DNA of 64,000 bases from Chlorokybus atmophyticus (lineage: Eukaryota > Plantae > Mesostigma and Chlorokybus algae): positions 262,702-326,701 of the forward strand of contig RHPI01002069.1 of NCBI GenBank assembly GCA_009103225.1, given 5' to 3'. Made by a program: the position numbers and the translations under genes. Shown in pieces: positions 28,771 to 43,596 of the stretch (positions within the stretch are counted from its first letter, which is position 1; each line of letters begins with the position of its first letter). The notes under the pieces are model-generated. The model did no database searches. It worked only from the letters and a program-made list of their open reading frames with translations, and was not told the origin of the DNA.

Positions 28771-31177
28771 ATGAGCTTCAATCGCTTTGCCACTGACTTG
28801 CGGCAAAAAGCCAGAAAGCTGGTTTGGCAGAATAAGCGTCGCCATCAGGTATACCACCTTACTTGACGTGGAGTGTTTTGCATGCATCAACAGGAGCAGC
28901 ACTTGCTTTGCTGTGCAATACGTCTTACCCCCCTGTGTCGCCTTGCACTGCAATACAAGCACATGCAGCGCATTTGCTGCTCGCTGACCCGCTGTCATGG
29001 CAGGAAAGTGGCTTTGATCTGGATCTTACGTACATCACTGAGAACATCATTGCAATGGGCTATCCAGCTAGCCGATCTGGCCTTTTCAGCAGATTTGAGG
29101 TAGTTGCTGGGAGTTTGTTGTGTGCACGGCTTTTTACACAGGTGTTGCCGTTTGTAGCATGACTTACAGTTGCCATGTACAGGGCCTGTACCATAACGAT
29201 ATGAGTCATGTGCTGCAGTTCTTGGAAACACACCACAAGGTATGCCATGCCGTGCGAAGGCGTACGATCTGGCTGGCTGCATTGTTGGTTAAGCTTCTGT
29301 TGTGGTATGTTGGTGCATGAAATAATTGCTAAGGTTGGTTTCAATTCTCAGGATTGTTTCAAGGTATACAACTTGTGTTCTGAGCGCGCTTATGACGCGG
29401 ACAGCTTTGATGGATTGGTGAGTACTGGAGGACATGTTATTGTACAGGGATGGGATCTGTGCATGCTGATTGCAGTTGGCCCATACTGCTGCACTGACTT
29501 TGCGGTGTTCAAGTCCAGCCATACTTTTTGTCCAGACGCAGTATTGGTCGCATGATGCCAGCAGCAACACCACTTGCACAGCATTTCCCATGCAGCCTGT
29601 TGCCAGCCATCAACCAACCTGTGTGTTCTGCAGGTAGCAGCATTCCCTGTTGAGGATAACCAGTGCGCCCCATTGCAACTGTTAGTGGCATTTTGCGAGA
29701 GTGCCAAAGCATGGCTGAGGCGCGGCATGAACAACGTTGTCATTGTACACTGTGGAAGCGGCGTGCATCGTACTGGGCTTGCGATTTGCTGCCTTCTTTT
29801 GTACTTGCGGGTGAGAAGACCGTAAGTACAAGACATATTGGCAGTTGCGAATGAGGTCAACCACTGTCTGCGATCTGGACATGTCCTAAGTTTGTACAGT
29901 GTTGGTTGCACGTCTGTATGTTCGCACTTAGCTTTGTTCCAAGCAGCCTCTGCCCTCTGCTCTCTTGTTTGCTGCTTTCCACAACAACAAGCTTGTTTCC
30001 ATGGCAAGCAGCAAGCAGTCGGTAGCAGGACACAAGTGACATGTTATCTGCGCCTGGCAGTTTGCGAACACTGCAGACGCTGCAGTTGCACACTTCAGCA
30101 GAAAGCGTGTTGCGGATGGGAAGGGCGTGACATTGCCCAGCCATCGGCGATACATAGCATACTTTGAGGAGTGGCTGAAAGGTCCGCGACCATCTCCGCC
30201 ACCGACTCAACTGAAGCTGCGTCACGTGCGGTTGCGTGATGGTCCGCCATGGCTCCGCCCCATTGTGACCGTTTCATCGCACGCGGGCACCCTCTGGCAT
30301 GCCAAGAACACTTCCATTGTTCCTGGCTTTGCGTCATCTCTTTGGCGTCAAGGTGCCACAGAGAAAGTGTCTAGCCCTACAGCGAAAGGTGGCATGCGGG
30401 ACCTAAAGGTGTACGAGCTCGTGCCACGCATCACTGCAATCTTGGCAGGAGATTTCAAAGTCACCTTTCAAGATGAGTTTGGGGAGTTCTCGTGTTGGTT
30501 GAACACAGGCCATGTGTCACACAGCGTGATGCTGAAGGGCGGGGAACTGGACTTCTTTGGTCGTAGGCTACAAGCCGGCCGTGAGTTTGCCATTGAACTT
30601 GTTTTCAAGGACGCAACTACACCCGATAGCACACGCGCAAGTCAAGATGAGAATGCTTTGCAAGGTACAATCCCATCTTGTCATCACCTTGAGTAAATCA
30701 CGTCCGTGGATCAGCAGCACTCATCTCATCTCAAACATCATGTGAATGCCGATAGTGGCATGATAGCAGCAGGCAAGCTGCCCTTTGACAATTTTGTGCA
30801 CAGATCGCCCGCGTCAGGCACAATCTGCTGTGGAAACCTCTGCCCAAGGTTCTCCGCGCACAAGTGTTGCTCCTGTAGCAACCAAAGCAGCAGGGTCCGC
30901 GAGTGGTACGCAGTCTGAGGAAGATGCAATCTTTTCAGATGACAATGAAACACCACGTGCTTCAACGGAACAAGAAAAGCAGGGCACGCTCAGCAACGAG
31001 ACTGCAGAAGGTATCTCTGAGACTGCAGCCACGAGCCCGCTTCCAATGTCGGACGTGCAGAGTGAACCAGTGAAGGCAACCGCGCAGCCCCCTGATACTC
31101 AACCGTCAGCAGCCAATGGACAGTTTGCTGGCGCAGATCCTGGCGTGTTTGCTCTGGACTCCGACGAAGACGATTAA
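28771..31177 (+). CDS. PTEN: PTEN-like phosphatase with C2 domain and acidic tail; non-canonical P-loop HCGSGVHRTG
   Basis: Spliced reading MSFNRFATDLRQKARKLVWQNKRRHQ|ESGFDLDLTYITENIIAMGYP...GLYHNDM...FKVYNLCSERAYD...FPVEDNQCAPL...VIVHCGSGVHRTGLAICCLLLY...DGKGVTLPSHRRYIAYF, then a C2-like exon (30127-30664) and a final exon to the stop at 31177. Confidence 0.88.
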
Positions 31178-33552: not shown

Positions 33553-36500
33553 TTACCCTGTCAATATGGTTTTCCAATTGATGCTTAGCAACTGCGCGTG
33601 GGTCAGTGTTGTAGGGCAACATGATGGGGGGGGTGCCGATAAGTTTATTGAGAGCGCCGGTGCTTTTAGACGTGGGAAGGTGATAGGTTCTGGAAGCCCG
33701 CCTGAAGTAAACCAACACATCAGGGCACATGTAATGCTGCATGTTACATCATTGCAAGCGCGTCCTTGCGCACAGATACCAGGACAAGAAAGTACGGCAA
33801 CGGCCCATGCATGAGCAGAACACAACAGCAGTACTCTGCGACCATTCCAGACTGTACCCTCATGATAAAGGCTGGCACAGCGCGACCTGTTGTACCTGAC
33901 TCTCCGCTCGCGTTTCAGCTGAATGTCACCACACAGTTGACCAGCGCGGGCCCCTTTGGAGGTCAGATCCACTTCAAAATGGTAGGTTGGTTCACCAGCC
34001 AGATGGGACTCCACAAGGTCACGCAAAGGCAGCATGCCGCGTCCGCAGCAATCATCGTTCCTCGCAATATCATAATCCATGACCCTTATCAAGATGATGT
34101 CATACTGAAGCACATCCAGCTCTTGCGTCACCAACGCAAGCTTTGGAAGCGTCTGCCAAGCAGCTATGTTACTGATTGCAATTGGATATGCACACAACAT
34201 GAAACATGCTGTGGAGCAGTAACTGACCAAGTACTTGCCTTGGGATCCCAGACAGGGTTTAGACACTTGTAGATTGTGGGCGTTTGCTCTGGTATGACCA
34301 GCGCAGGACCTTGAAACACTGTGTAAGGATCTGAGGTTCCTTCAACGTCTTTGGCAAGCAAGCTGTAGCCCGAAAGCGACATGAACACTATGTGCCAGCA
34401 CTCCTCATCAATGGCCGGCTCTTTCGTGTCTCGGGGAGGGTCGACAATGGGAACCTCAAACGTGGCGCAGACAGGTTTATGGTCGCTTGTGACAACGAGT
34501 GGAGCTGCTCGGTATAGCAGCTGCTTGACTGGTAAGCTGGATACAGACTTCCACAAGATACGATCACACCATGCTGGCAGTCGTGAAGTCAGGTATCTGC
34601 AGCCGTGAGGGAAGTCATCCACCACCTCGTTGCGGTGCACCTGTAGGCGCATGACAGCGCAGTTGAAGCGCAATGACTACGCAGTCTTGAGGAGTTTGCA
34701 GCTCGAGACAACTTGCAAAAACAGCTTTCATGTTTGCGGCCATGCTGCTTACCAGAAGGCAGCACACACTGTGCAATCACAACAGACATGCCTCAAAATG
34801 CAAGGTTTTTAGCCCTTTATGATGCAGTTGCCGCAGTTCTGACCTTGAAAGTTGGTGCAAAGGTGATGTCGCCTTCCTTGAATCCAGAAAACACTTTTTT
34901 CAACTTGATGTCTCTGTGGAGCTCGTCATGAGCGAGCAATCCGCTAAAGCTTCCTTGGTTTATTTGCTCCAGAACCCTGTTGAATTCCTCAGTATTTGGA
35001 CTTTTAGCACTAGTCTTGCTTTCAAACGATTGTGCAGCCGGCAAGTCCAGGCGATAATTCAGATCGCCCATCCAAAACACATGGTGAAACTGAGTGAGCA
35101 GGTCCATGTCCTTCTGCCCAATGCTGATCTCACCAACAATCTCTGCCATGCAACCACATACCATGAGCCACCACCAAGGCTGCAGCACACTACCAGTCCA
35201 GGAGCATGCCAAGTCGCAAGGCTCAATGGAAGCAGTTGAGCAGTACAAGTGGAGTCTGCATTTTGCAGCTGCATTCCCACAGTCTGTTTCACCTCGAAAG
35301 TTGCTGTTGCGCATGGCGCATTGTCCAGCATGTGCTGCAAAATGCGAGTTAACAAAACAGAGCCAGGTGTCTCCAACCTGCAAACATATGAATCAAAACG
35401 GACATGGGACATAAGGTGGACTGAAGGTGTGCGAATGTGCATGCGTGGTGTGTACCTTGAACGCGACTGCCACGCCTCCTTTATTCGAGTACACATGGCC
35501 CACACCTGTCGCCTCAGTGCCGCACGTCAACCCACATATCCTGCCCTGCAGATGAACAACCTTACAGCATACTGCAACACCACTCACCACACATCAACTC
35601 CTCATCACCCTGCTTTTGCATGGCCCGCACAACTACCATACCTCGGCATCGTCACGGACAAAAGCCAATAATCGCATCTGGCCAAGTGACTGCGATGTCA
35701 GCAACCGATAGCGTGGTCCTAGGTGCTGCTTAAAGTGCTGTTGCCAATCTTCATCACAACTCGAGTATGGTGAGCGTGCTGAGTACTGACACTCTTGTGC
35801 ACCGACAACCACAATATGGTTTGATTCGTCCTGAGGGATCCAGCTAGAAAGGTCTGCAGGCTGTGCACAGAGTCCATTACTGCATGCTTCGACGCCAGAC
35901 TACTCGGCAATTGGTCAGCCACTTGCAGTAGACCAGGGCGAACGGCATTGCACGCTATAACAATCATTCTATACTTGTGCACATCACTCGCTTGAACAAC
36001 AACAAAAGACATTGCATCATGCCGACAGGTGTTGTGTTCGATCTGTGCTTGAAGTGGGAAACAATTGACAATCACACGCATGGCACAAGCAGTGCAAAAG
36101 AGCACTGCCTGCAAACAATGCAACGTACTGGAGGGGCGTTGCCAACGTTCCACGTGCCAATAAACACTTTAACATTGTGCTCGATGTCTACGCGCAACAG
36201 CGCAACCTCAATCTGGACCTGTCATATGCACCGAGCACAGAGTCAGAGCGCATAAAGCCAAAGCGTAGCAAACAGAGCAAATTATACCTCTCCTGCACGT
36301 TCCTTCTTGCCGGACTTGTTATACAGAGGGTACCATGCTGGTTCTAGGGCATGAGCTCCTGCAGTCCATGTAATTTATGCAGGAACGTCAAAACTTGTCT
36401 CAGTTGTGAGACGCAATGTGCAAGCTGTAAAGGTCAATTGCTGCGGCAATGACTGCACACACCGCTTCGCACAGCAAAACACATTTGCCTGCAATAAGAA

Positions 36501-38175: not shown

Positions 38176-38961
38176 ACCCGACCGGCTCATGCGTTAATAA
38201 GGCCTCCTGGTTACCTGGTTCGTTCGCAATAAGATTCCCCAGCGTACCCCAGCGCTACCGTCTGTACTAGCATATGACGTGCGTTATGTGGGTAGCTTCA
38301 AAGCTCACGTCACGTCGCCATTTTTATCTGAGGCACTGTTATGGTGCTTGCAGGCTGGCTGGTGGTTGACGGCAAGACGGAGGGAGTCAGCGGCAGGAGG
38401 GTTGTCGTCGTTGGCGGTGGTGGCGCCGGGTGAGGCCTTGGTCAACTGGTCGTTGACAGCGTTGCCGATTGCTGCTCTGTGAAGGCTGCTCATCTGCCCG
38501 TGCCGGTATGATGATGGCATGCTGGTGGTGGTGTGCATGGTGACGTCGCTTGTGCAGAAAAGGACGTGTGGGTGCAGCGTTGCCTTGTAACTTTGCCCGC
38601 GAGCTTGCAGCGATTTGTTCTTGGCAAGACTGTCAAGCTGTGGCCAGTGTTGTACACAGACAAATGTGACTTGACCTTGTCTGCAGCTTGGCTTCCGCAC
38701 GTAGGTTGCGCATCAGCGTAGGAGGGCTAGGCTACTATTCTTGTGTGCCATGTTGCGGCAGAGGAAGTGTGGTCCACAGTTGCATTGTGCAGCAGCAATA
38801 GCTGTATGCCTTTCCCAGTCTTTGTTGTTTTTGCTAGCTGCAGCATCCCTATTAATGACAATGCCATCGCTGTGCAAAGTGGTTCTTGTCAACATTGCTT
38901 TATCGTAGCATCGCCTATACACTCACATACTTCGGCACAACATCTCTACACTGCAGGCAAC

Positions 38962-41511
38962 ATGGCATCCACAGCGGTCGCAGCAAAGACGCTCACAGTG
39001 GCTGGTCAGGCTGTCACCAGCCAGCAGTCAGCAGCAGTCAGCCGCTCAGCGCCCTCCCAGGCATCCCGCAGTGATGTGCGCCAGGCATTGTCTGCGCGTG
39101 CGATGGGCGCTTCGAAGTCACAATTCTCTGGAAGCTGGCTGCAGACCAAGAGCCGCCCTGCAAAGGCACAGTGGGCCGCCACCCACATTGTCTCCGCTGC
39201 TGTCGAGGCTTATCCCCAGGGTGAGGTCGACAAGGCGCTCGAGTACTTGGAGAGGATGAGAACATTCCCCAAGTAAGTTATATGAGTTTCACAGGCGACC
39301 ATTGCATGCATGTGTGGCACTGGAGTTACCCTTGTTGACATGCATATCAGTGGTGTTACGACGCGCATTGCCTGATTGTCTTTCCTGTGGTCTGCGCAGC
39401 AACTATTACTCGCCCATTACACTGAATCTTGGAAGGGTGTTCTCGAATACAAACAAGTCCATCCCTGCCAGCCTGGGCAGCAAGGACTTCAGTGTCGACT
39501 TCTCTACCCTCTCGGTAAGTTCTCGGTAAGAGATGTTTTTGCTGTCCTGTAAATTGAATGTTTTCACTTGCTTGCTTGAACATATATAGGCATGCAGCTT
39601 CTTAGTGTCACAGGGCGATACCATCATTAAGCAGTATGACAAAAAGTATCTTTCATGGGATCTTGCACTCATGATGCCATGTTCGTGACAGACGGAGAAG
39701 GCCCCACCACTGATCATTGAGGATGCGCTTCGCATTGAGGGCATCCGCATCTACAGGAAAACCCAGCGCGATGTGTCTTTGCCTCAGATCCGCCAGTCAT
39801 ATGGCAACCCCAACCTTGTTGAGCAGGTAAGTAGTCTGTTGCAATTCCCCACCAAGAGATTGAAAAATTGCTTGCTTACTAGCATTGCTTTGCTTACATC
39901 CTACACGTTATCAGTTGTGTCGCAAAGCTGATTGTGGCATGCACTTGCAGGAAAACAAGATCTGGTGGCTGACACATTGCCAGGCGCTCCGGGACGGTGA
40001 CAAGGCAAACAAGGTGCTTGTGATCGATGGCATTGAGGAGGAGTACAGCGGTTTGACGGTAGGTGCACATCACATTGCATTTAACCGAAAGTGTTTGTAA
40101 ACATTATCAGGCAGGGCACTAAGCTAGTGTGCAGAACATGGGCTTGCATTGCTTGACATTGGCTCTTATCGCCTTGCTGGCAGGTGCTCTTCAACGAATA
40201 CCGTGACGAGCTAATGTACTTCACCAAGGACTCTTTGTATGACACTGCTGAAGGCGGACAGATCTCCGCCACCCCAGATGCTGAGGGTCTGAAGGGCTAC
40301 TGGTAAGCCAACCGCATGTATGTATCCATCCTATCCACTGTCCATGACTGGTTGTGATGTATCATCCATGTCTCAAGTCCACCAGCTGGTCATGAAGGAA
40401 CTCTGTAGTGCCTGCAAGCAATGGTCTATTGTTCCCAAGGCACAGTGCAAGTGTTGCACTGCTAATGCATGCTTCTGTGCGATTAGGTTTGGGCGCCAGA
40501 AGGGAAACACTTACGAGTCCAGCTGGTGGGCTATGCTTGCCAACCCCCGTGTCAGGATGACATGGCCACGTGTTACCTTCAGCGGCGAGGATGTGTCCTT
40601 TGACTGGGTAAGTGCCTAGTTGTTGCAGAGAGTCGACTTATGAAGGTGTATGGTCTTACCATCCGCTTCAACAGGTTTGCTTCGACATCAACACCAATGA
40701 GATGACGGCGTATGGTGATGTGGTCTGGATCCGTACTGGTGACCGCGGCGCGTGCTACAAGAAGTACGAGCACCTGTACTTCCTTCGTGACGTGTACAAG
40801 ACCTTCTTCGACAACTACTTCAAGGATGGAGCCTCAAGTGGCAGCAGCAAGGGAGCCTTCGTTCCGGACAACAAGGGCATTGTAAAAGCTGTCGGCGAGC
40901 GCAAGGGCAAAATTGCCTGCCTCATTGAAGAGCACTTCGACCCCTTTGAGTTCCGCTCTTACAACGAGTACTACCCCAAGAACGGCTATGACATGGAGTA
41001 CCTGACATACCTGTGGGGTGCCGACAGCGTGCGCTACACGTCCAACCCAACAGACGGTAAGATTGAGGAGGACGTGACGGTGACCAAGTGCGTGACCAAG
41101 GTGAAGCCCAAGGACTACGCTGGCATCCTGGTCATCGGCGCGTACGCCATGGACCGCCTGCGCTACCAGAGCAAGGTGTGGAAGGGCAAGAAGAACGATG
41201 CGCCCGGTGTGGAGTTTGTCCGCCAGACCATGCGCGACAATGTGCCCATTGGCAACATCTGCCACTCTATCTGGATCTTCTGCGCCGCGCCTGAGCTGCT
41301 CAAGGGCAAGAAGGTCACTTGCGCGCACAACCTCGTGTGTGATGTTGAGGGTGCTGGCGCGGAGATTGTTTACGAGGGTGAGGGCACGGCCGAGCTCGTC
41401 ATTGACGGCAATCTCATCTGCGGTAAGCATCCCGGCATGGTCGAGGACTTCAACGTCGCCTTCATTGGTGAGGTGGAGAAGGCGCATGTGCGCACCCCTG
41501 TCACTGTCTAA
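38962..41511 (+). CDS. Predicted plastid-targeted fusion: uncharacterised NTF2/SnoaL-like domain + DJ-1/PfpI (class I GATase-like) domain, 581 aa, 7 exons
   Basis: GT-AG exons 38962-39272, 39400-39514, 39692-39826, 39951-40058, 40184-40302, 40487-40607 and 40675-41511 join in frame (1746 nt). The Ala/Ser-rich transit peptide lacks acidic residues apart from one Asp. The C-terminal domain carries KIACLIEEHFDPFEF...DYAGILVIGAYAMDRLR...IGNICHSIW...LLKGKKVTC...VIDGNLICGKHP, which is the DJ-1/PfpI pattern. Confidence 0.85.
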
Positions 41512-42569
41512 GTTCCTGCCGCGCGTATGGTATGGTATGACCCTCAATCCCCGTAATATATCCACGGTGCTGCGAGCTGTGAGCGCAGTTTGGGCAGGCA
41601 GGGCTGGTCTCTGCTGATATATGTCATTAGGTGCCTGACTTTGCACTGTTAGCTTTTTGGAGGCATTTGTGTAAGTAGTGGATGTGTACAGTTGACGCTG
41701 TGGGCAGCCTCTACATATTGATTAAACACTCTGCTGTGATGGACCTGAATACCACATCAATGGTCCCACTTCTTTCCATGCATGACTATGATTGGGCTCG
41801 TAATGCCGCGCGAAGCTTGGTTGCTGGTTTGCAGTGTAGCAAATGTGAACAGCAAAAGTCGCTGCGTGGCATCCTTCCTAAACAAGCTGTGCAATTGTCA
41901 ATGTCCTAAGGTCGTGAATTGACAAGTGCGGTTGCAATTGCAACCAACAACGCTCTACAGTTATGCGGAGTGCTGGCACCCACAGAAGAATTGTTGGATG
42001 CCTTTCTTTCAGCAACACGGTCACACAAGCATACGCACGCCGCATTGTATGTACAGTATATACTAGCGTCCTTGCCTATCACAGCACAAACATAATGCTA
42101 GCAATACCAGCCGTTCGTGCTCTCCGACGACATCGCCAGCACCGCATCCTCCTCCGCCAATGGAGCCGTCGCGTGCACTCCCGTCCAGCCCGGCTCGGCC
42201 GCCACGACAGCAGCTCCCCACTCCAGCAATGCGAGGCTCTGTACGCGTTGCAGTGCGCACAAGATGCGCTGCCTGTACAGGGCCAGGAAACCCGCCCGCC
42301 GGTTGTGCAACAAGAGCCAAGGCAAATCAGCAGCCTTACAAGGGACTGTACGTGTCGGCACTCAGCATGCGTGCTCAAGCATGCAGCGCTAAGTTGATCA
42401 GCACCTCAAGTGTGATGCACTGAGTCTTAAGCACAACGAGTGAAGGATAACAACACTTGACTAGCCAGTGAAACTTCGAACATGTCTACCAGCAATCTAC
42501 CAACAAGCCACTTTGCATCTAGAAGCAGTAACTACCTACACTTGACAGGTGACACCACCCAGCTTAGCC

Positions 42570-43596
42570 CTACTGATTGCCTGCAGGTGGCGTGCCAGCA
42601 GCCCTGTCGTCGTTGTTCTTGTAGTCGTCCCAGCCTCGGACCCACTCGCGTCCAGGCGGAGCGCGCGCAGAAGTGGTGGCGTGGGCGCGTAGGTGTGAGC
42701 CGACATGGTCCCGCAGCGCTGCAAAGGCCTCATTGTTCACAAGACGGGGGTCGGGCTCCGCCTGCCCCGTGAGCATACGCCACAGGTCAGGGTTCTCCTC
42801 GCCAAGCAGCTCCTCGTAAGCGTCCAGCGCAGATGCAGACATCCCGGAAGCATGGTCAGCAGCCCAACGACCCATCACCAGGTCCAGCTCAAGCAAACCA
42901 CGCTGCCTGTGGTTTTGTATGTCAGCGACAATCGGTGACTGATGTGTGCTACGTGACCATATACAATTGTAACCTTGCATGTATGCGTATACGTGTGTTT
43001 GTGCGTGGATGTGCACGAGCGTGCTTGTATGTACATGTGTGCGCTCACGCTTAAGTGTGTGTGCGCGTGTGTGTGGCAGGATGTTATGCTTTTCTGCCTT
43101 TTCGCAACATGCATAATGAGTTCAGTGAGCAGCGACTGAATACCTCTGTGGAAATGGCACCTGCACCTAAATGCTGTGATGGAAGCTTGAATTACGAGTG
43201 TAGACACACGCAACCAGGATGATACTGGTGATGCTCACCGGCTGCGGTAAAGCAGGCGAGATATCCTCCGCTCGCGGGCCGACTTCTCCTCGCTGCAGCT
43301 GGCTTCAGCGGCAAAGCTGCACATGCAACACGCAGATGCACTTCTTCATCACCTCATCAACTTGATCATTGCATTCGACAAGTCATCTAGTCAGTAGCAT
43401 ATGTCTCTGCTAGACTAGCATAGCGCCATGGGCATGAATCTCATTCTTACCCACCCCTTCCCCTTTCATACCTTCGGCGGCCGGACGTCGACGCCGCGGA
43501 AAGCACTGACGCTGATGGTAGCGGCAATGAGTTAAGAGATGACAACGAGCACCGCAGCGCCCTGGCGCATGCCCTCCCCCCCACCGCCGCCGCCAT
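42570..43596 (-). CDS. SDHAF2: Succinate dehydrogenase assembly factor 2 (Sdh5/SdhE flavinylation factor)
   Basis: Three exons give a mitochondrial-type presequence MAAAVGGRACARALRCSL..., then RLLYRSRQRGLLELDLVMGRW...YEELLGEENPDLWRMLTGQ. Confidence 0.9.

What the first reader, a model, noticed from the sequence alone, without database searches (positions are those of the whole stretch)
38962..41511. Plastid-targeted two-domain fusion enzyme: NTF2/SnoaL-like domain joined to a bacterial-type DJ-1/PfpI domain
Seen in sequence: seven GT-AG exons splice in frame to 581 aa. The product has a ~80-aa Ala/Ser-rich transit-like leader. It is followed by an aromatic-rich domain (ENKIWWLTHCQALRDGD...EYRDELMYF...SWWAMLANPRVRMTWPRVTFSGEDVSFDWVCFD...GDVVWIRTGDRGACYKKYEHLYFLRDVY), a Gly/Ser linker and a DJ-1/PfpI domain. 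All six introns fall in the leader and first domain. The domain junction and the whole DJ-1 domain sit in one 837-bp intron-free exon rich in C/G-ending codons. Established: DJ-1/PfpI enzymes use a Glu plus a nucleophile-elbow Cys (glyoxalase III/deglycase-type chemistry). Both appear present (FDPFEF; NICHS). Canonical plant DJ-1 proteins are single or tandem DJ-1 domains, not this architecture. Inference: the LIEEHFD...IGAYAMDRLRY subtype looks like a bacterial subfamily, and the first domain has an NTF2/SnoaL-like strand pattern. This may be two neighbouring bacterial genes acquired laterally, fused and retargeted to the plastid as one pathway step, such as carbonyl detoxification or specialised metabolism.
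Basis: partly seen in the sequence, partly recalled or inferred. Interest (0 to 1): 0.78.

Follow-up and report, generated by a model that had tools for sequence, protein, structure and literature searches.

The report
Algal NTF2-like plus DJ-1 fusion enzyme
A real, expressed gene of the early-branching green alga Chlorokybus joins into one targeted protein two enzyme-like parts whose ancestors are separate neighbouring genes in cyanobacteria, which links two uncharacterised families to one still unknown pathway.

Summary
Seven GT-AG coding exons (38962-41511, +) give 581 aa. This is identical to the public Chlorokybus atmophyticus model Chrsp17S02687. Transcript contigs from two studies remove exactly the six predicted introns and reveal one more intron in the 5' UTR.

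The last exon carries a DJ-1/PfpI domain with Glu395, Cys499 and His500. It is about 60% identical to 200-aa cyanobacterial proteins.

The first domain has no Pfam or PDB sequence match. Its AlphaFold model has an NTF2/SnoaL-like core. It is homologous along its whole length to a highly conserved 188-aa cyanobacterial "hypothetical protein".

In cyanobacteria the 188-aa gene and the DJ-1 gene are operon neighbours. A DJ-1 gene lies downstream on the same strand within 200 bp in 16 of 80 genomes, and within 7 kb in 52 of 80.

Mesostigma viride has a full-length 581-aa ortholog, so the fusion predates the split of the two algae. A second Chlorokybus protein joins the same N-domain to SnoaL_2 repeats that are also found in the cyanobacterial cluster.

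Later lateral transfer cannot be separated from endosymbiotic transfer. Plastid targeting and the chemistry remain inferred. The scan noted this same stretch once before (s1-174288).

The parts
38393..38505 (+). Non-coding 5' leader exon. The 5' end is a minimum estimate.
   Evidence: Contigs of X1 and X2 carry 102-113 further letters upstream of the start-codon exon. Their last 30 letters lie at 38471-38500. The donor is G|GTATGA at 38505/38506. There is no ATG in the supported leader, and an in-frame stop lies 19 codons upstream of the ATG.
38506..38956 (+). 5' UTR intron (GT..AG, 451 nt)
   Evidence: The aligner's single mismatch at 38955 disappears when the joint is placed at 38505|38957.
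38962..39207 (+). Targeting-type leader, residues 1-82
   Evidence: Composition is 20 Ala, 15 Ser, 6 Thr and only 2 acidic residues. The leader is absent from cyanobacterial homologs and from leaderless paralogs P0353 and P0394. In the about 3% divergent relative X4 it shows 7 changed versus 3 silent codons.
39208..40830 (+). First domain, residues 83-355. It is homologous along its length to the 188-aa cyanobacterial family. It is interrupted by the six coding introns 39273-39399, 39515-39691, 39827-39950, 40059-40183, 40303-40486 and 40608-40674.
   Evidence: tblastn of the Nostoc 188-aa protein hits exons 4-7 in order. Alignment A2 gives 42-46% identity with 20 columns invariant over all 44 rows. 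Introns are confirmed by RNA contigs.
39803..40803 (+). NTF2/SnoaL-like core, residues about 180-346
   Evidence: The AlphaFold2 model has pLDDT 86.3 and pTM 0.85. The Foldseek PDB top 50 are almost all SnoaL, NTF2 or ketosteroid isomerase type (E from 2e-4, probability 1.0). VIA Z is 9-10.6 over model residues 101-267.
40831..40890 (+). Gly/Ser-rich linker, residues 356-375. It lies inside the 837-bp last exon.
   Evidence: The linker is similar in the Mesostigma ortholog. RNA contig 40755-41765 crosses it without interruption.
40891..41508 (+). DJ-1/PfpI domain, residues 376-581, of cyanobacterial type
   Evidence: Pfam PF01965 scores 60.7 bits against a cut-off of 26.6. The best PDB matches are SAV1875 and YhbO. 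Identity to about 200-aa cyanobacterial proteins is 56-67%.
40948..40950 (+). Glu395, the conserved DJ-1-superfamily Glu in FDPFEF
   Evidence: It aligns with the Glu of the IEY motif of SAV1875 in the HMMER alignment. It is nearly invariant in the family alignment A3, as E34 of P0086.
41260..41265 (+). Cys499-His500, the nucleophile-elbow ICH motif
   Evidence: It aligns with the ICHG motif of SAV1875. In A3 the Cys is nearly invariant and the His is invariant.
41509..41767 (+). Stop codon (41509-41511) and 3' UTR, a minimum extent
   Evidence: RNA contigs run to 41765 and 41767.

Best explanation
This is one expressed nuclear gene of Chlorokybus that makes a single 581-aa protein. The protein has three parts:
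1. An Ala/Ser-rich N-terminal targeting leader, most likely for the plastid.
2. An enzyme-type domain with an NTF2/SnoaL-like core. It belongs to a very conserved, uncharacterised, mainly cyanobacterial family.
3. A DJ-1/PfpI domain of cyanobacterial type with an intact Glu-Cys-His site.

The two catalytic parts descend from genes that lie side by side in cyanobacterial operons. They reached the alga from a cyanobacterium. They were joined into one reading frame before Chlorokybus and Mesostigma diverged.

Inferred mechanism: the two domains carry out consecutive steps on one small molecule. The NTF2-like pocket would do acid-base chemistry such as isomerisation, hydration or cyclisation. The DJ-1 cysteine would then attack a carbonyl or amide-type intermediate. 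The recurrent partners are CMD/AhpD-like, VOC/glyoxalase, EthD and SnoaL_2 genes in cyanobacteria, and a haem peroxidase fusion in Mesostigma. These point to handling of reactive carbonyl or peroxide-derived electrophiles. That chemistry is a guess.
For: - Gene model and splicing.
- Eukaryotic setting: the flanking genes are Sdh5, an inositol-phosphatase-like gene with a C2 domain, and PTEN2-C2.
- DJ-1 domain and active-site residues.
- NTF2-like fold.
- Homology of the first domain to the Nostoc 188-aa protein, whose gene ends 24 bp upstream of the DJ-1 gene.
- Adjacency statistics over 80 genomes, 73 of them Cyanobacteriota.
- The bacterial DJ-1 genes closest to the eukaryotic clade include P0006, which lies 12 bp from a 188-aa family gene.
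- Eukaryotic DJ-1 copies form one clade (100/99), the fused copies are sisters (98/93), and both sit inside the cyanobacterial-type clade (97/93).
- Full-length Mesostigma ortholog, 68% identical over both domains and the linker.
- A second cluster-derived fusion in Chlorokybus joins the N-domain to four SnoaL_2 repeats. These are 36-40% identical to the SnoaL_2 domain of the gene that follows the NTF2-like gene in Dolichospermum.
- The first domain has 36 invariant positions in the 28-row alignment A6 of algal and cyanobacterial members. In a relative's transcript the domain shows mostly silent changes.
Against: - No single contig spans the whole mRNA. Two contigs overlap by 28 nt inside exon 7.
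- No targeting predictor was available, so plastid versus mitochondrion is open.
- No enzymatic evidence exists for either family.
- The protein scores below the curated cut-offs of the PfpI/YhbO and glyoxalase III NCBIfam models, so known activities cannot simply be transferred.
- 28 of 80 cyanobacterial loci have no DJ-1 gene within 7 kb downstream, so the coupling is frequent but not obligatory.
- Physical contact between the domains could not be tested.
Confidence: 0.72

Rival explanations
1. Origin by a later lateral transfer of a cyanobacterial gene cluster into the common ancestor of Mesostigma and Chlorokybus, with onward spread to a diatom, rather than by endosymbiotic transfer from the plastid ancestor. 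This competes only on origin, not on what the protein is.
For: Distribution is narrow. The word search with the eukaryotic N-domain found only 11 proteins among 5.8 billion. They come from Mesostigma, Chlorokybus, one diatom and one unidentified eukaryotic metagenome contig. The eukaryotic DJ-1 clade is sister to a specific pair of bacterial sequences, at 97/91 support, rather than to all cyanobacteria. At least two cluster components are present in Chlorokybus.
Against: The branch between eukaryotic and cyanobacterial N-domains is long, and four eukaryote-specific insertions indicate great age. The word search has length and sensitivity limits. The taxonomy of P0001 and P0400, which have a leader plus DJ-1 only, is unknown. 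Differential loss after endosymbiotic transfer would give the same pattern.
Confidence: 0.45
2. The NTF2-like domain is not a catalyst. It would be a ligand-binding, regulatory or oligomerisation module attached to an autonomous DJ-1-type deglycase or glyoxalase.
For: Many NTF2-like proteins only bind ligands. The structural neighbours include designed binders and NTF2 itself. In these algae the same domain is joined to unrelated partners: DJ-1, a haem peroxidase and SnoaL_2 repeats. Mesostigma also keeps a DJ-1-only copy.
Against: Conservation is extreme, at 74-91% identity across cyanobacterial orders, with many invariant polar residues (Glu, Asp, Arg, Lys, His, Tyr, Cys). That pattern is typical of an active site. 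Stand-alone copies with their own leader exist.
Confidence: 0.2
3. The pair belongs to a specialised-metabolite tailoring pathway of polyketide or aromatic type rather than to stress detoxification.
For: The cyanobacterial cluster is rich in cofactor-free tailoring-type domains: EthD, ABM, SnoaL_2, VOC, CMD, enoyl-CoA hydratase and SDR. The best structural neighbours include SnoaL-type polyketide enzymes.
Against: No core synthase (PKS, NRPS or terpene) was seen in the flanks inspected. The cluster is very widespread and very conserved for a specialised product. It sits next to partner-switching regulators (STAS, SpoIIE, RsbW-like), which are typical of stress control.
Confidence: 0.25
4. The 581-aa model merges two separate genes or transcripts.
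For: The RNA evidence is two contigs, not one. The 3' contig has higher nominal depth.
Against: The reading frame is open from 40612 to 41511 with no stop between the domains. The 3' contig starts inside the first domain and crosses the linker. The contig break lies in a stretch that is identical at the protein level in N-domain paralogs (CYKKYEHLY). That offers a plausible but untested reason for an assembly-graph branch there. The DJ-1 part has no leader or start codon of its own at the junction. Mesostigma has the same 581-aa architecture.
Confidence: 0.03

Closest known systems
YhbO / PfpI / SAV1875 class of the DJ-1/PfpI superfamily (PDB 1oi4, 1g2i, 4y0n)
   Same: Same fold family by sequence (E 2.6e-12 to 4e-5). 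The nucleophile-elbow Cys is followed by His, and the conserved Glu is present.
   Different: The score is below the curated subfamily cut-offs: TIGR01382 gives 65.5 against 139, and deglycase PfpI gives 41 against 330. The domain carries a family-specific insertion around RYQ..KGKKN and extra invariant motifs, VTCAHN and GKHPG. It is fused behind an NTF2-like domain and a targeting leader.
Plant DJ-1 homologs such as Arabidopsis DJ-1D (PDB 3uk7, 4ofw)
   Same: Both are members of the DJ-1/PfpI superfamily in the green lineage. The match covers only the C-terminal part of the domain (query residues 176-271, E about 1e-8).
   Different: The plant proteins are tandem DJ-1 domains of a different subfamily. 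The protein here is a single domain. Its nearest relatives are cyanobacterial 200-aa proteins at about 60% identity.
NTF2-like superfamily enzymes: SnoaL-type cyclases, ketosteroid isomerase, limonene epoxide hydrolase
   Same: Cone-shaped alpha+beta core. VIA Z is 9-10.6 and whole target domains are covered.
   Different: There is no sequence-level match to any Pfam or PDB NTF2 or SnoaL family. The domain has a confidently modelled extra part of about 100 residues at its N-terminus and eukaryote-specific insertions. Catalytic residues are not assigned.
Cyanobacterial 188-aa 'hypothetical protein' family (for example Nostoc sp. PCC 7107, L001:5411-5977; ESM Atlas cluster 'putative SnoaL-like protein', 1400 members)
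   Same: Homologous over its full length to the first domain, at 42-46% identity with 20 columns invariant over all 44 rows. It is encoded beside the DJ-1 gene.
   Different: It is a stand-alone protein, or is fused to EthD domains in Dolichospermum. It lacks the four insertions and the N-terminal helix of the algal form, and it has no leader.
Other fusions of this DJ-1 subfamily
   Same: These fusions tie the DJ-1 domain to its operon neighbours. An AGE-like (GlcNAc 2-epimerase-type) domain plus DJ-1 forms proteins of about 870 aa (P0244, of unnamed origin, and Physarum P0254). An RsbW-like kinase domain plus DJ-1 forms P0243.
   Different: The partners differ. None carries the NTF2-like domain or a targeting leader.

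Membership tests
DJ-1/PfpI superfamily (Pfam PF01965) | Profile score above the gathering threshold | tested here: met
   60.7 bits for exon 7 and 58.3 bits for P0392, against a cut-off of 26.6.
DJ-1/PfpI superfamily | Nucleophile-elbow cysteine | tested here: met
   Cys499 in NICHS aligns with the Cys of ICHG in SAV1875. It is nearly invariant in A3.
DJ-1/PfpI superfamily | Conserved glutamate after strand 1 that contacts the cysteine | tested here: met
   Glu395 (FDPFEF) aligns with the Glu of the IEY motif of SAV1875. It is at least 90% conserved in A3. Contact with the cysteine itself was not tested.
PfpI/YhbO subfamily (TIGR01382; NF040823 deglycase PfpI) | Score above the curated cut-off | tested here: not met
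   65.5 against 139.05, and 41.4 against 330. The Cys-His pair typical of this class is present, so the domain resembles the class without being a member by the curated models.
DJ-1-type glyoxalase III (TIGR01383) | Score above the curated cut-off | tested here: not met
   12.1 against 131.25.
NTF2-like superfamily | Cone-like alpha+beta fold | tested here: met
   Model pLDDT is 86.3. Foldseek probability is 1.0 with SnoaL, NTF2 and ketosteroid isomerase hits. VIA Z reaches 10.6 over 113-126 aligned residues.
SnoaL / SnoaL_2 / NTF2 Pfam families | Sequence profile match | tested here: not met
   No Pfam hit for any N-domain exon at E<=1, none for P0392 at E<=0.01, and none for the Nostoc 188-aa protein at E<=10. 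No credible PDB sequence hit with a family profile: best E 0.28, to unrelated proteins.
SnoaL-type or ketosteroid-isomerase-type enzymes | Known catalytic residues in the pocket | not tested
   Model coordinates could not be inspected. Only the list of invariant polar residues is available.
Chloroplast transit peptide | N-terminal extension that is rich in Ala, Ser and Thr, poor in acidic residues, and absent from prokaryotic homologs | tested here: inconclusive
   Composition and absence from homologs fit. No predictor or localisation data were available, so mitochondrial or dual targeting is not excluded.
Rosetta-stone fusion of operon neighbours | The two parts exist as separate adjacent genes on the same strand in the donor lineage | tested here: met
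   The spacer is 24 bp in Nostoc PCC 7107. Of 80 loci, 16 have DJ-1 within 200 bp, 31 within 1 kb and 52 within 7 kb downstream. The spacer is 12 bp, in the opposite order, in L088.

The most novel reading that the evidence does not exclude
Several genes of a cyanobacterial stress or tailoring cluster (NTF2-like, DJ-1, SnoaL_2 and possibly others) entered the ancestor of the earliest-diverging streptophyte algae together. There they were re-assorted around the NTF2-like domain as a hub into several targeted multi-domain enzymes: with DJ-1, with four SnoaL_2 repeats, and with a haem peroxidase. If so, the NTF2-like domain defines a new enzyme family that hands a reactive intermediate to interchangeable downstream domains. 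The algal fusions would then reveal the wiring of a widespread, unstudied cyanobacterial pathway.
Probability: 0.35. Interest if true: 0.72.

Novelty: new variant of a known kind. Interest (0 to 1): 0.6.

Why it matters
The 188-aa NTF2-like family is among the more conserved cyanobacterial "hypothetical proteins". It shows 74-91% identity across orders and occurs in 307 species genomes. It has no Pfam family, no structure, and no paper in the searched library. This DJ-1/PfpI subfamily is equally unstudied.

A natural fusion of the two, conserved in two algal classes and matching their operon adjacency, is strong genomic evidence that they act together. It gives a concrete experimental handle: one polypeptide to express, one cysteine to mutate, and a cyanobacterial operon to knock out.

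It also documents an operon-to-fusion transition after transfer from a cyanobacterium. It adds a clade-restricted marker for the Mesostigma plus Chlorokybus lineage.

Tried and rejected
- Complex prediction of the Nostoc 188-aa protein with its DJ-1 neighbour was not folded. One alignment held eukaryotic rows beside microbial ones. The job was counted, so there is no verdict.
- Folding the whole mature fusion (alignment A6) left the DJ-1 half below pLDDT 50, because only two rows covered it (pTM 0.57). This says nothing about domain contacts.
- Mixed alignments A4 and A5 put parts of the DJ-1-only rows onto the first domain, so they were discarded.
- The ESM Atlas search by features gave no usable hit.
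- Profile and sequence searches of the first domain against Pfam, NCBIfam and PDB sequences gave nothing credible.
- Literature searches for the domain combination, the cluster, or Chlorokybus with DJ-1 found nothing. One search was malformed.
- The Chlorokybus/Mesostigma genome paper does not mention these families.
- The organisms behind P0001/P0400 and P0395/P0397 could not be named.
- The idea that the last exon has a foreign codon bias was dropped: GC3 is 0.78 against 0.67-0.75.
- The joined exon sequence was never sent to a search tool. Exons were searched by reference. After the identical database protein P0392 was used instead.
Full report
**Observation**

Twelve in-frame models came out. 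One has 581 aa, with exons 38962-39272, 39400-39514, 39692-39826, 39951-40058, 40184-40302, 40487-40607 and 40675-41511. Five donors are GTAAG and one is GTAGG. The last exon is 837 bp.

I joined the exons only inside local scripts, to check frame and length. A later word search returned a database protein, P0392 (jgi/Chlat1/2088/Chrsp17S02687, Chlorokybus atmophyticus), that is identical to the spliced translation over all 581 residues. From then on I used P0392 as the reference. The window is therefore Chlorokybus nuclear DNA, and the gene model is already in the public annotation. There only the DJ-1 domain is recognised.

**Transcript evidence**

Runs X1 (2013) and X2 (2021), from two studies of the same coded organism, each hold a contig that skips exactly the six predicted introns. 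Each also holds a second contig covering 40755-41765.

The two contigs overlap by 28 nt inside exon 7. The break falls in a stretch (CYKKYEHLY) that is identical at the protein level in N-domain paralogs. That offers a plausible but untested reason for an assembly-graph branch. The 3' contig starts inside the first domain and crosses the linker into the DJ-1 domain and the 3' UTR.

The 5' contig carries 102-113 further letters. They map to 38471-38500 and upstream. This defines a non-coding leader exon ending at 38505 and a canonical intron at 38506-38956. An in-frame stop lies 19 codons upstream of the ATG, and no upstream ATG occurs in the supported leader.

A roughly 3% divergent relative (run X4) shows four of the same exon joints over exons 1-5, the exon 2/3 joint offset by one base. 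Its listed differences affect 7 changed and 3 silent codons in the leader, against 1 changed and 4 silent in the first domain. That fits a fast-evolving targeting peptide in front of a constrained domain.

The flanking genes are ordinary eukaryotic ones: Sdh5, an inositol-phosphatase-like gene with a C2 domain, and PTEN2-C2. Contamination is excluded.

**C-terminal domain**

- Exon 7 matches Pfam DJ-1_PfpI (E 1.9e-16).
- Among solved structures it matches SAV1875 and YhbO best.
- Cys499-His500 aligns with the ICH nucleophile elbow, and Glu395 with the conserved superfamily glutamate.
- It stays below the curated cut-offs of the PfpI/YhbO and glyoxalase III NCBIfam models. It is therefore a distinct subfamily.
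- The word search shows 56-67% identity to hundreds of about 200-aa proteins. All the named ones are cyanobacterial: Nostoc, Calothrix, Synechocystis, Planktothrix and Picosynechococcus.
- Mesostigma (P0002) and an unidentified transcriptome (P0001) carry a leader plus this DJ-1 domain only.
- In a careful tree the five eukaryotic sequences form one clade (100/99). The two fused copies are sisters (98/93). The clade sits inside the cyanobacterial-type group (97/93), next to P0003 and P0006 (97/91) (quick version).

**First domain**

No exon of the first domain and no full-length homolog matches Pfam, NCBIfam or PDB sequences.

The key result came from gene context. In Nostoc sp. PCC 7107 the gene that ends 24 bp upstream of the DJ-1 gene encodes a 188-aa protein. 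tblastn places this protein on window exons 4, 5, 6 and 7, in order. A 44-sequence alignment shows homology over the whole 188 residues at 42-46% identity. Twenty columns are invariant over all 44 rows. The algal proteins carry four insertions and an extra N-terminal helix. In a 28-row subset (A6) 36 positions are invariant.

The 188-aa family is extremely conserved, at 74-91% identity among the 120 best hits. All are annotated as hypothetical.

An AlphaFold2 model of residues 80-358 is confident (pLDDT 86.3, pTM 0.85). Foldseek against the PDB returns almost only SnoaL, NTF2 and ketosteroid isomerase structures. VIA-align gives Z of 9-10.6 over model residues 101-267, covering whole target domains. 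The ESM Atlas search by shape finds two cyanobacterial clusters: a 1400-member cluster named "putative SnoaL-like protein", and an EthD-fused form. The NTF2-like inference therefore holds for residues about 180-346. The roughly 100 residues in front are modelled confidently but were not searched on their own.

**Adjacency in the donor lineage**

A scan of one genome per species found 307 genomes with the 188-aa family. Of the 80 best, 73 are Cyanobacteriota.

A DJ-1 homolog lies downstream on the same strand as follows:

| Distance to DJ-1 gene | Loci out of 80 |
|---|---|
| within 200 bp | 16 |
| more than 200 bp, up to 1 kb | 15 |
| 1-7 kb | 21 |
| none within the flank | 28 |

In at least two genomes the order is reversed, with 12 bp and 33 bp spacers. 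One of them, L088, encodes P0006, a member of the bacterial pair that branches next to the eukaryotic DJ-1 clade.

Recurrent companions are CMD/AhpD-like, EthD or ABM, VOC/glyoxalase and SnoaL_2 genes, an AGE-like 606-aa protein, and STAS, SpoIIE and RsbW-like partner-switching regulators.

In Dolichospermum the cluster is condensed into a few genes:
- CMD
- two EthD domains plus the NTF2-like domain (518 aa)
- CMD, EthD, VOC and two SnoaL_2 domains (997 aa)
- DJ-1
- the AGE-like protein
- STAS

**Distribution in eukaryotes**

The exhaustive search with exon 7, and a word search with the Mesostigma stand-alone N-domain protein, found these forms of the algal domain:
- alone with a leader (Mesostigma Mv01578, Chlorokybus Chrsp194S02997)
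- leaderless (Chrsp3S05645, Mv16629)
- with a signal-peptide-like start (the diatom Cyclophora tenuis, and an unidentified eukaryotic metagenome contig)
- fused to a haem peroxidase (Mv12193)
- fused to four SnoaL_2 repeats (Chlorokybus Chrsp24S03849)
- fused to DJ-1 (this gene and Mesostigma Mv10629)

Isoform Mv10629-RA.2 is 581 aa and 68% identical over both domains and the linker. [quoted passage not shown] The fusion therefore predates their split.

The SnoaL_2 repeats of Chrsp24S03849 are 36-40% identical to the SnoaL_2 domain of the Dolichospermum 997-aa cluster protein. At least two different fusion partners of the algal N-domain therefore trace to the same cyanobacterial cluster.

All eukaryotic N-domains form one clade (support 100) on a long branch from the cyanobacteria.

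**How it probably works**

Shown:
- one mRNA and one open reading frame
- an intact DJ-1 catalytic constellation
- an NTF2-like pocket domain under strong constraint
- descent of both parts from operon neighbours

Inferred:
- The leader directs the protein to the plastid. This rests on composition only.
- The two domains act on the same small molecule in consecutive steps. The NTF2-like part would supply acid-base catalysis, and the DJ-1 cysteine would attack a carbonyl or amide-type intermediate.

The companions (AhpD-like, VOC/glyoxalase and peroxidase domains, and stress-type regulators) make reactive carbonyl or peroxide-derived electrophiles my preferred substrate class. A tailoring role for an unknown metabolite is nearly as likely.

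**Origin**

Endosymbiotic transfer followed by wide loss, and a later lateral transfer into the Mesostigma/Chlorokybus ancestor, fit the data about equally.

Six introns lie in the first 909 coding nt and none in the last 837 nt. This imbalance hints that the DJ-1 part was added as an intron-free piece to an already intron-rich N-domain gene, rather than by simple read-through of a transferred operon. I could not test this.

**Comparison and novelty**

The parts belong to known superfamilies. Fusions of operon neighbours after transfer to eukaryotes are a known kind of event. New here are the architecture (NTF2-like plus DJ-1), the recognition of the first domain, and the functional link it creates between two uncharacterised, widespread cyanobacterial families. 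No paper in the searched library mentions it. I rate it a new variant of a known kind, with interest 0.6.

**Not obtained**

- A test of physical contact between the domains
- A targeting prediction
- The identity of some eukaryotic sources
- Any biochemical evidence

Noticed in passing
L077:5387-13732 (Dolichospermum sp. UHCC 0259): The cluster is condensed into multi-domain proteins: CMD; two EthD domains plus the NTF2-like domain (518 aa); CMD, EthD, VOC and two SnoaL_2 domains (997 aa); then DJ-1, an AGE-like 606-aa protein and STAS. This is an uncharacterised but widespread cyanobacterial gene cluster.
   Followed up: partly
L001:4164-5351 versus L001:5411-5977 (Nostoc sp. PCC 7107): The 395-aa NHL/beta-propeller protein ends in what looks by eye like a PEP-CTERM anchor. 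It begins with a near copy of the first 20 or so residues of the neighbouring 188-aa protein (the ..Y.YKELA..YSR.GLV motif). This may be a duplicated 5' end or a shared N-terminal signal.
   Followed up: no
P0282 (Mesostigma Mv12193, 574 aa) and P0274 (Chlorokybus Chrsp24S03849, 1163 aa): The same algal N-domain is fused to a haem peroxidase (PF00141) in Mesostigma and to four SnoaL_2 repeats in Chlorokybus. It behaves as a hub domain with interchangeable C-terminal partners.
   Followed up: partly
P0244 (870 aa), P0254 (Physarum polycephalum transcript, 872 aa) and P0243 (360 aa): There are other fusions of this DJ-1 subfamily. One joins it to the AGE-like (GlcNAc 2-epimerase-type) neighbour, including a copy in a slime-mould transcriptome. 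Another joins it to an RsbW-like HATPase_c_2 kinase domain.
   Followed up: partly
window 38305-38700 (-) and 40834-41646 (-): Long antisense ORFs of 131 aa and 270 aa overlap the 5' leader exon and the DJ-1 exon. The 131-aa ORF has no Pfam hit. Both look like by-products of GC-rich coding sequence.
   Followed up: partly
window 30127-30696 (+), 33553-35383 (-) and 42570-43016 (-): The neighbouring genes are a PTEN2-type C2 domain, an inositol-polyphosphate-phosphatase-like gene (Exo_endo_phos2) with a C2 domain, and an Sdh5/SDHAF2 flavinator. This is ordinary nuclear context.
   Followed up: partly
window 39513-39692, run X4: In the roughly 3% divergent relative's contig the exon 2/3 joint is offset by one base and carries one extra A. 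This is probably a sequence difference at the splice site in a cryptic sister species.
   Followed up: no
L086:4001-5080 (ENA metagenome contig, 341 kb): An intron-free copy of the algal-type N-domain with a signal-peptide-like start lies on a gene-poor contig that appears eukaryotic but is of unknown organism. A second paralog (P0397) lies on the same contig.
   Followed up: no
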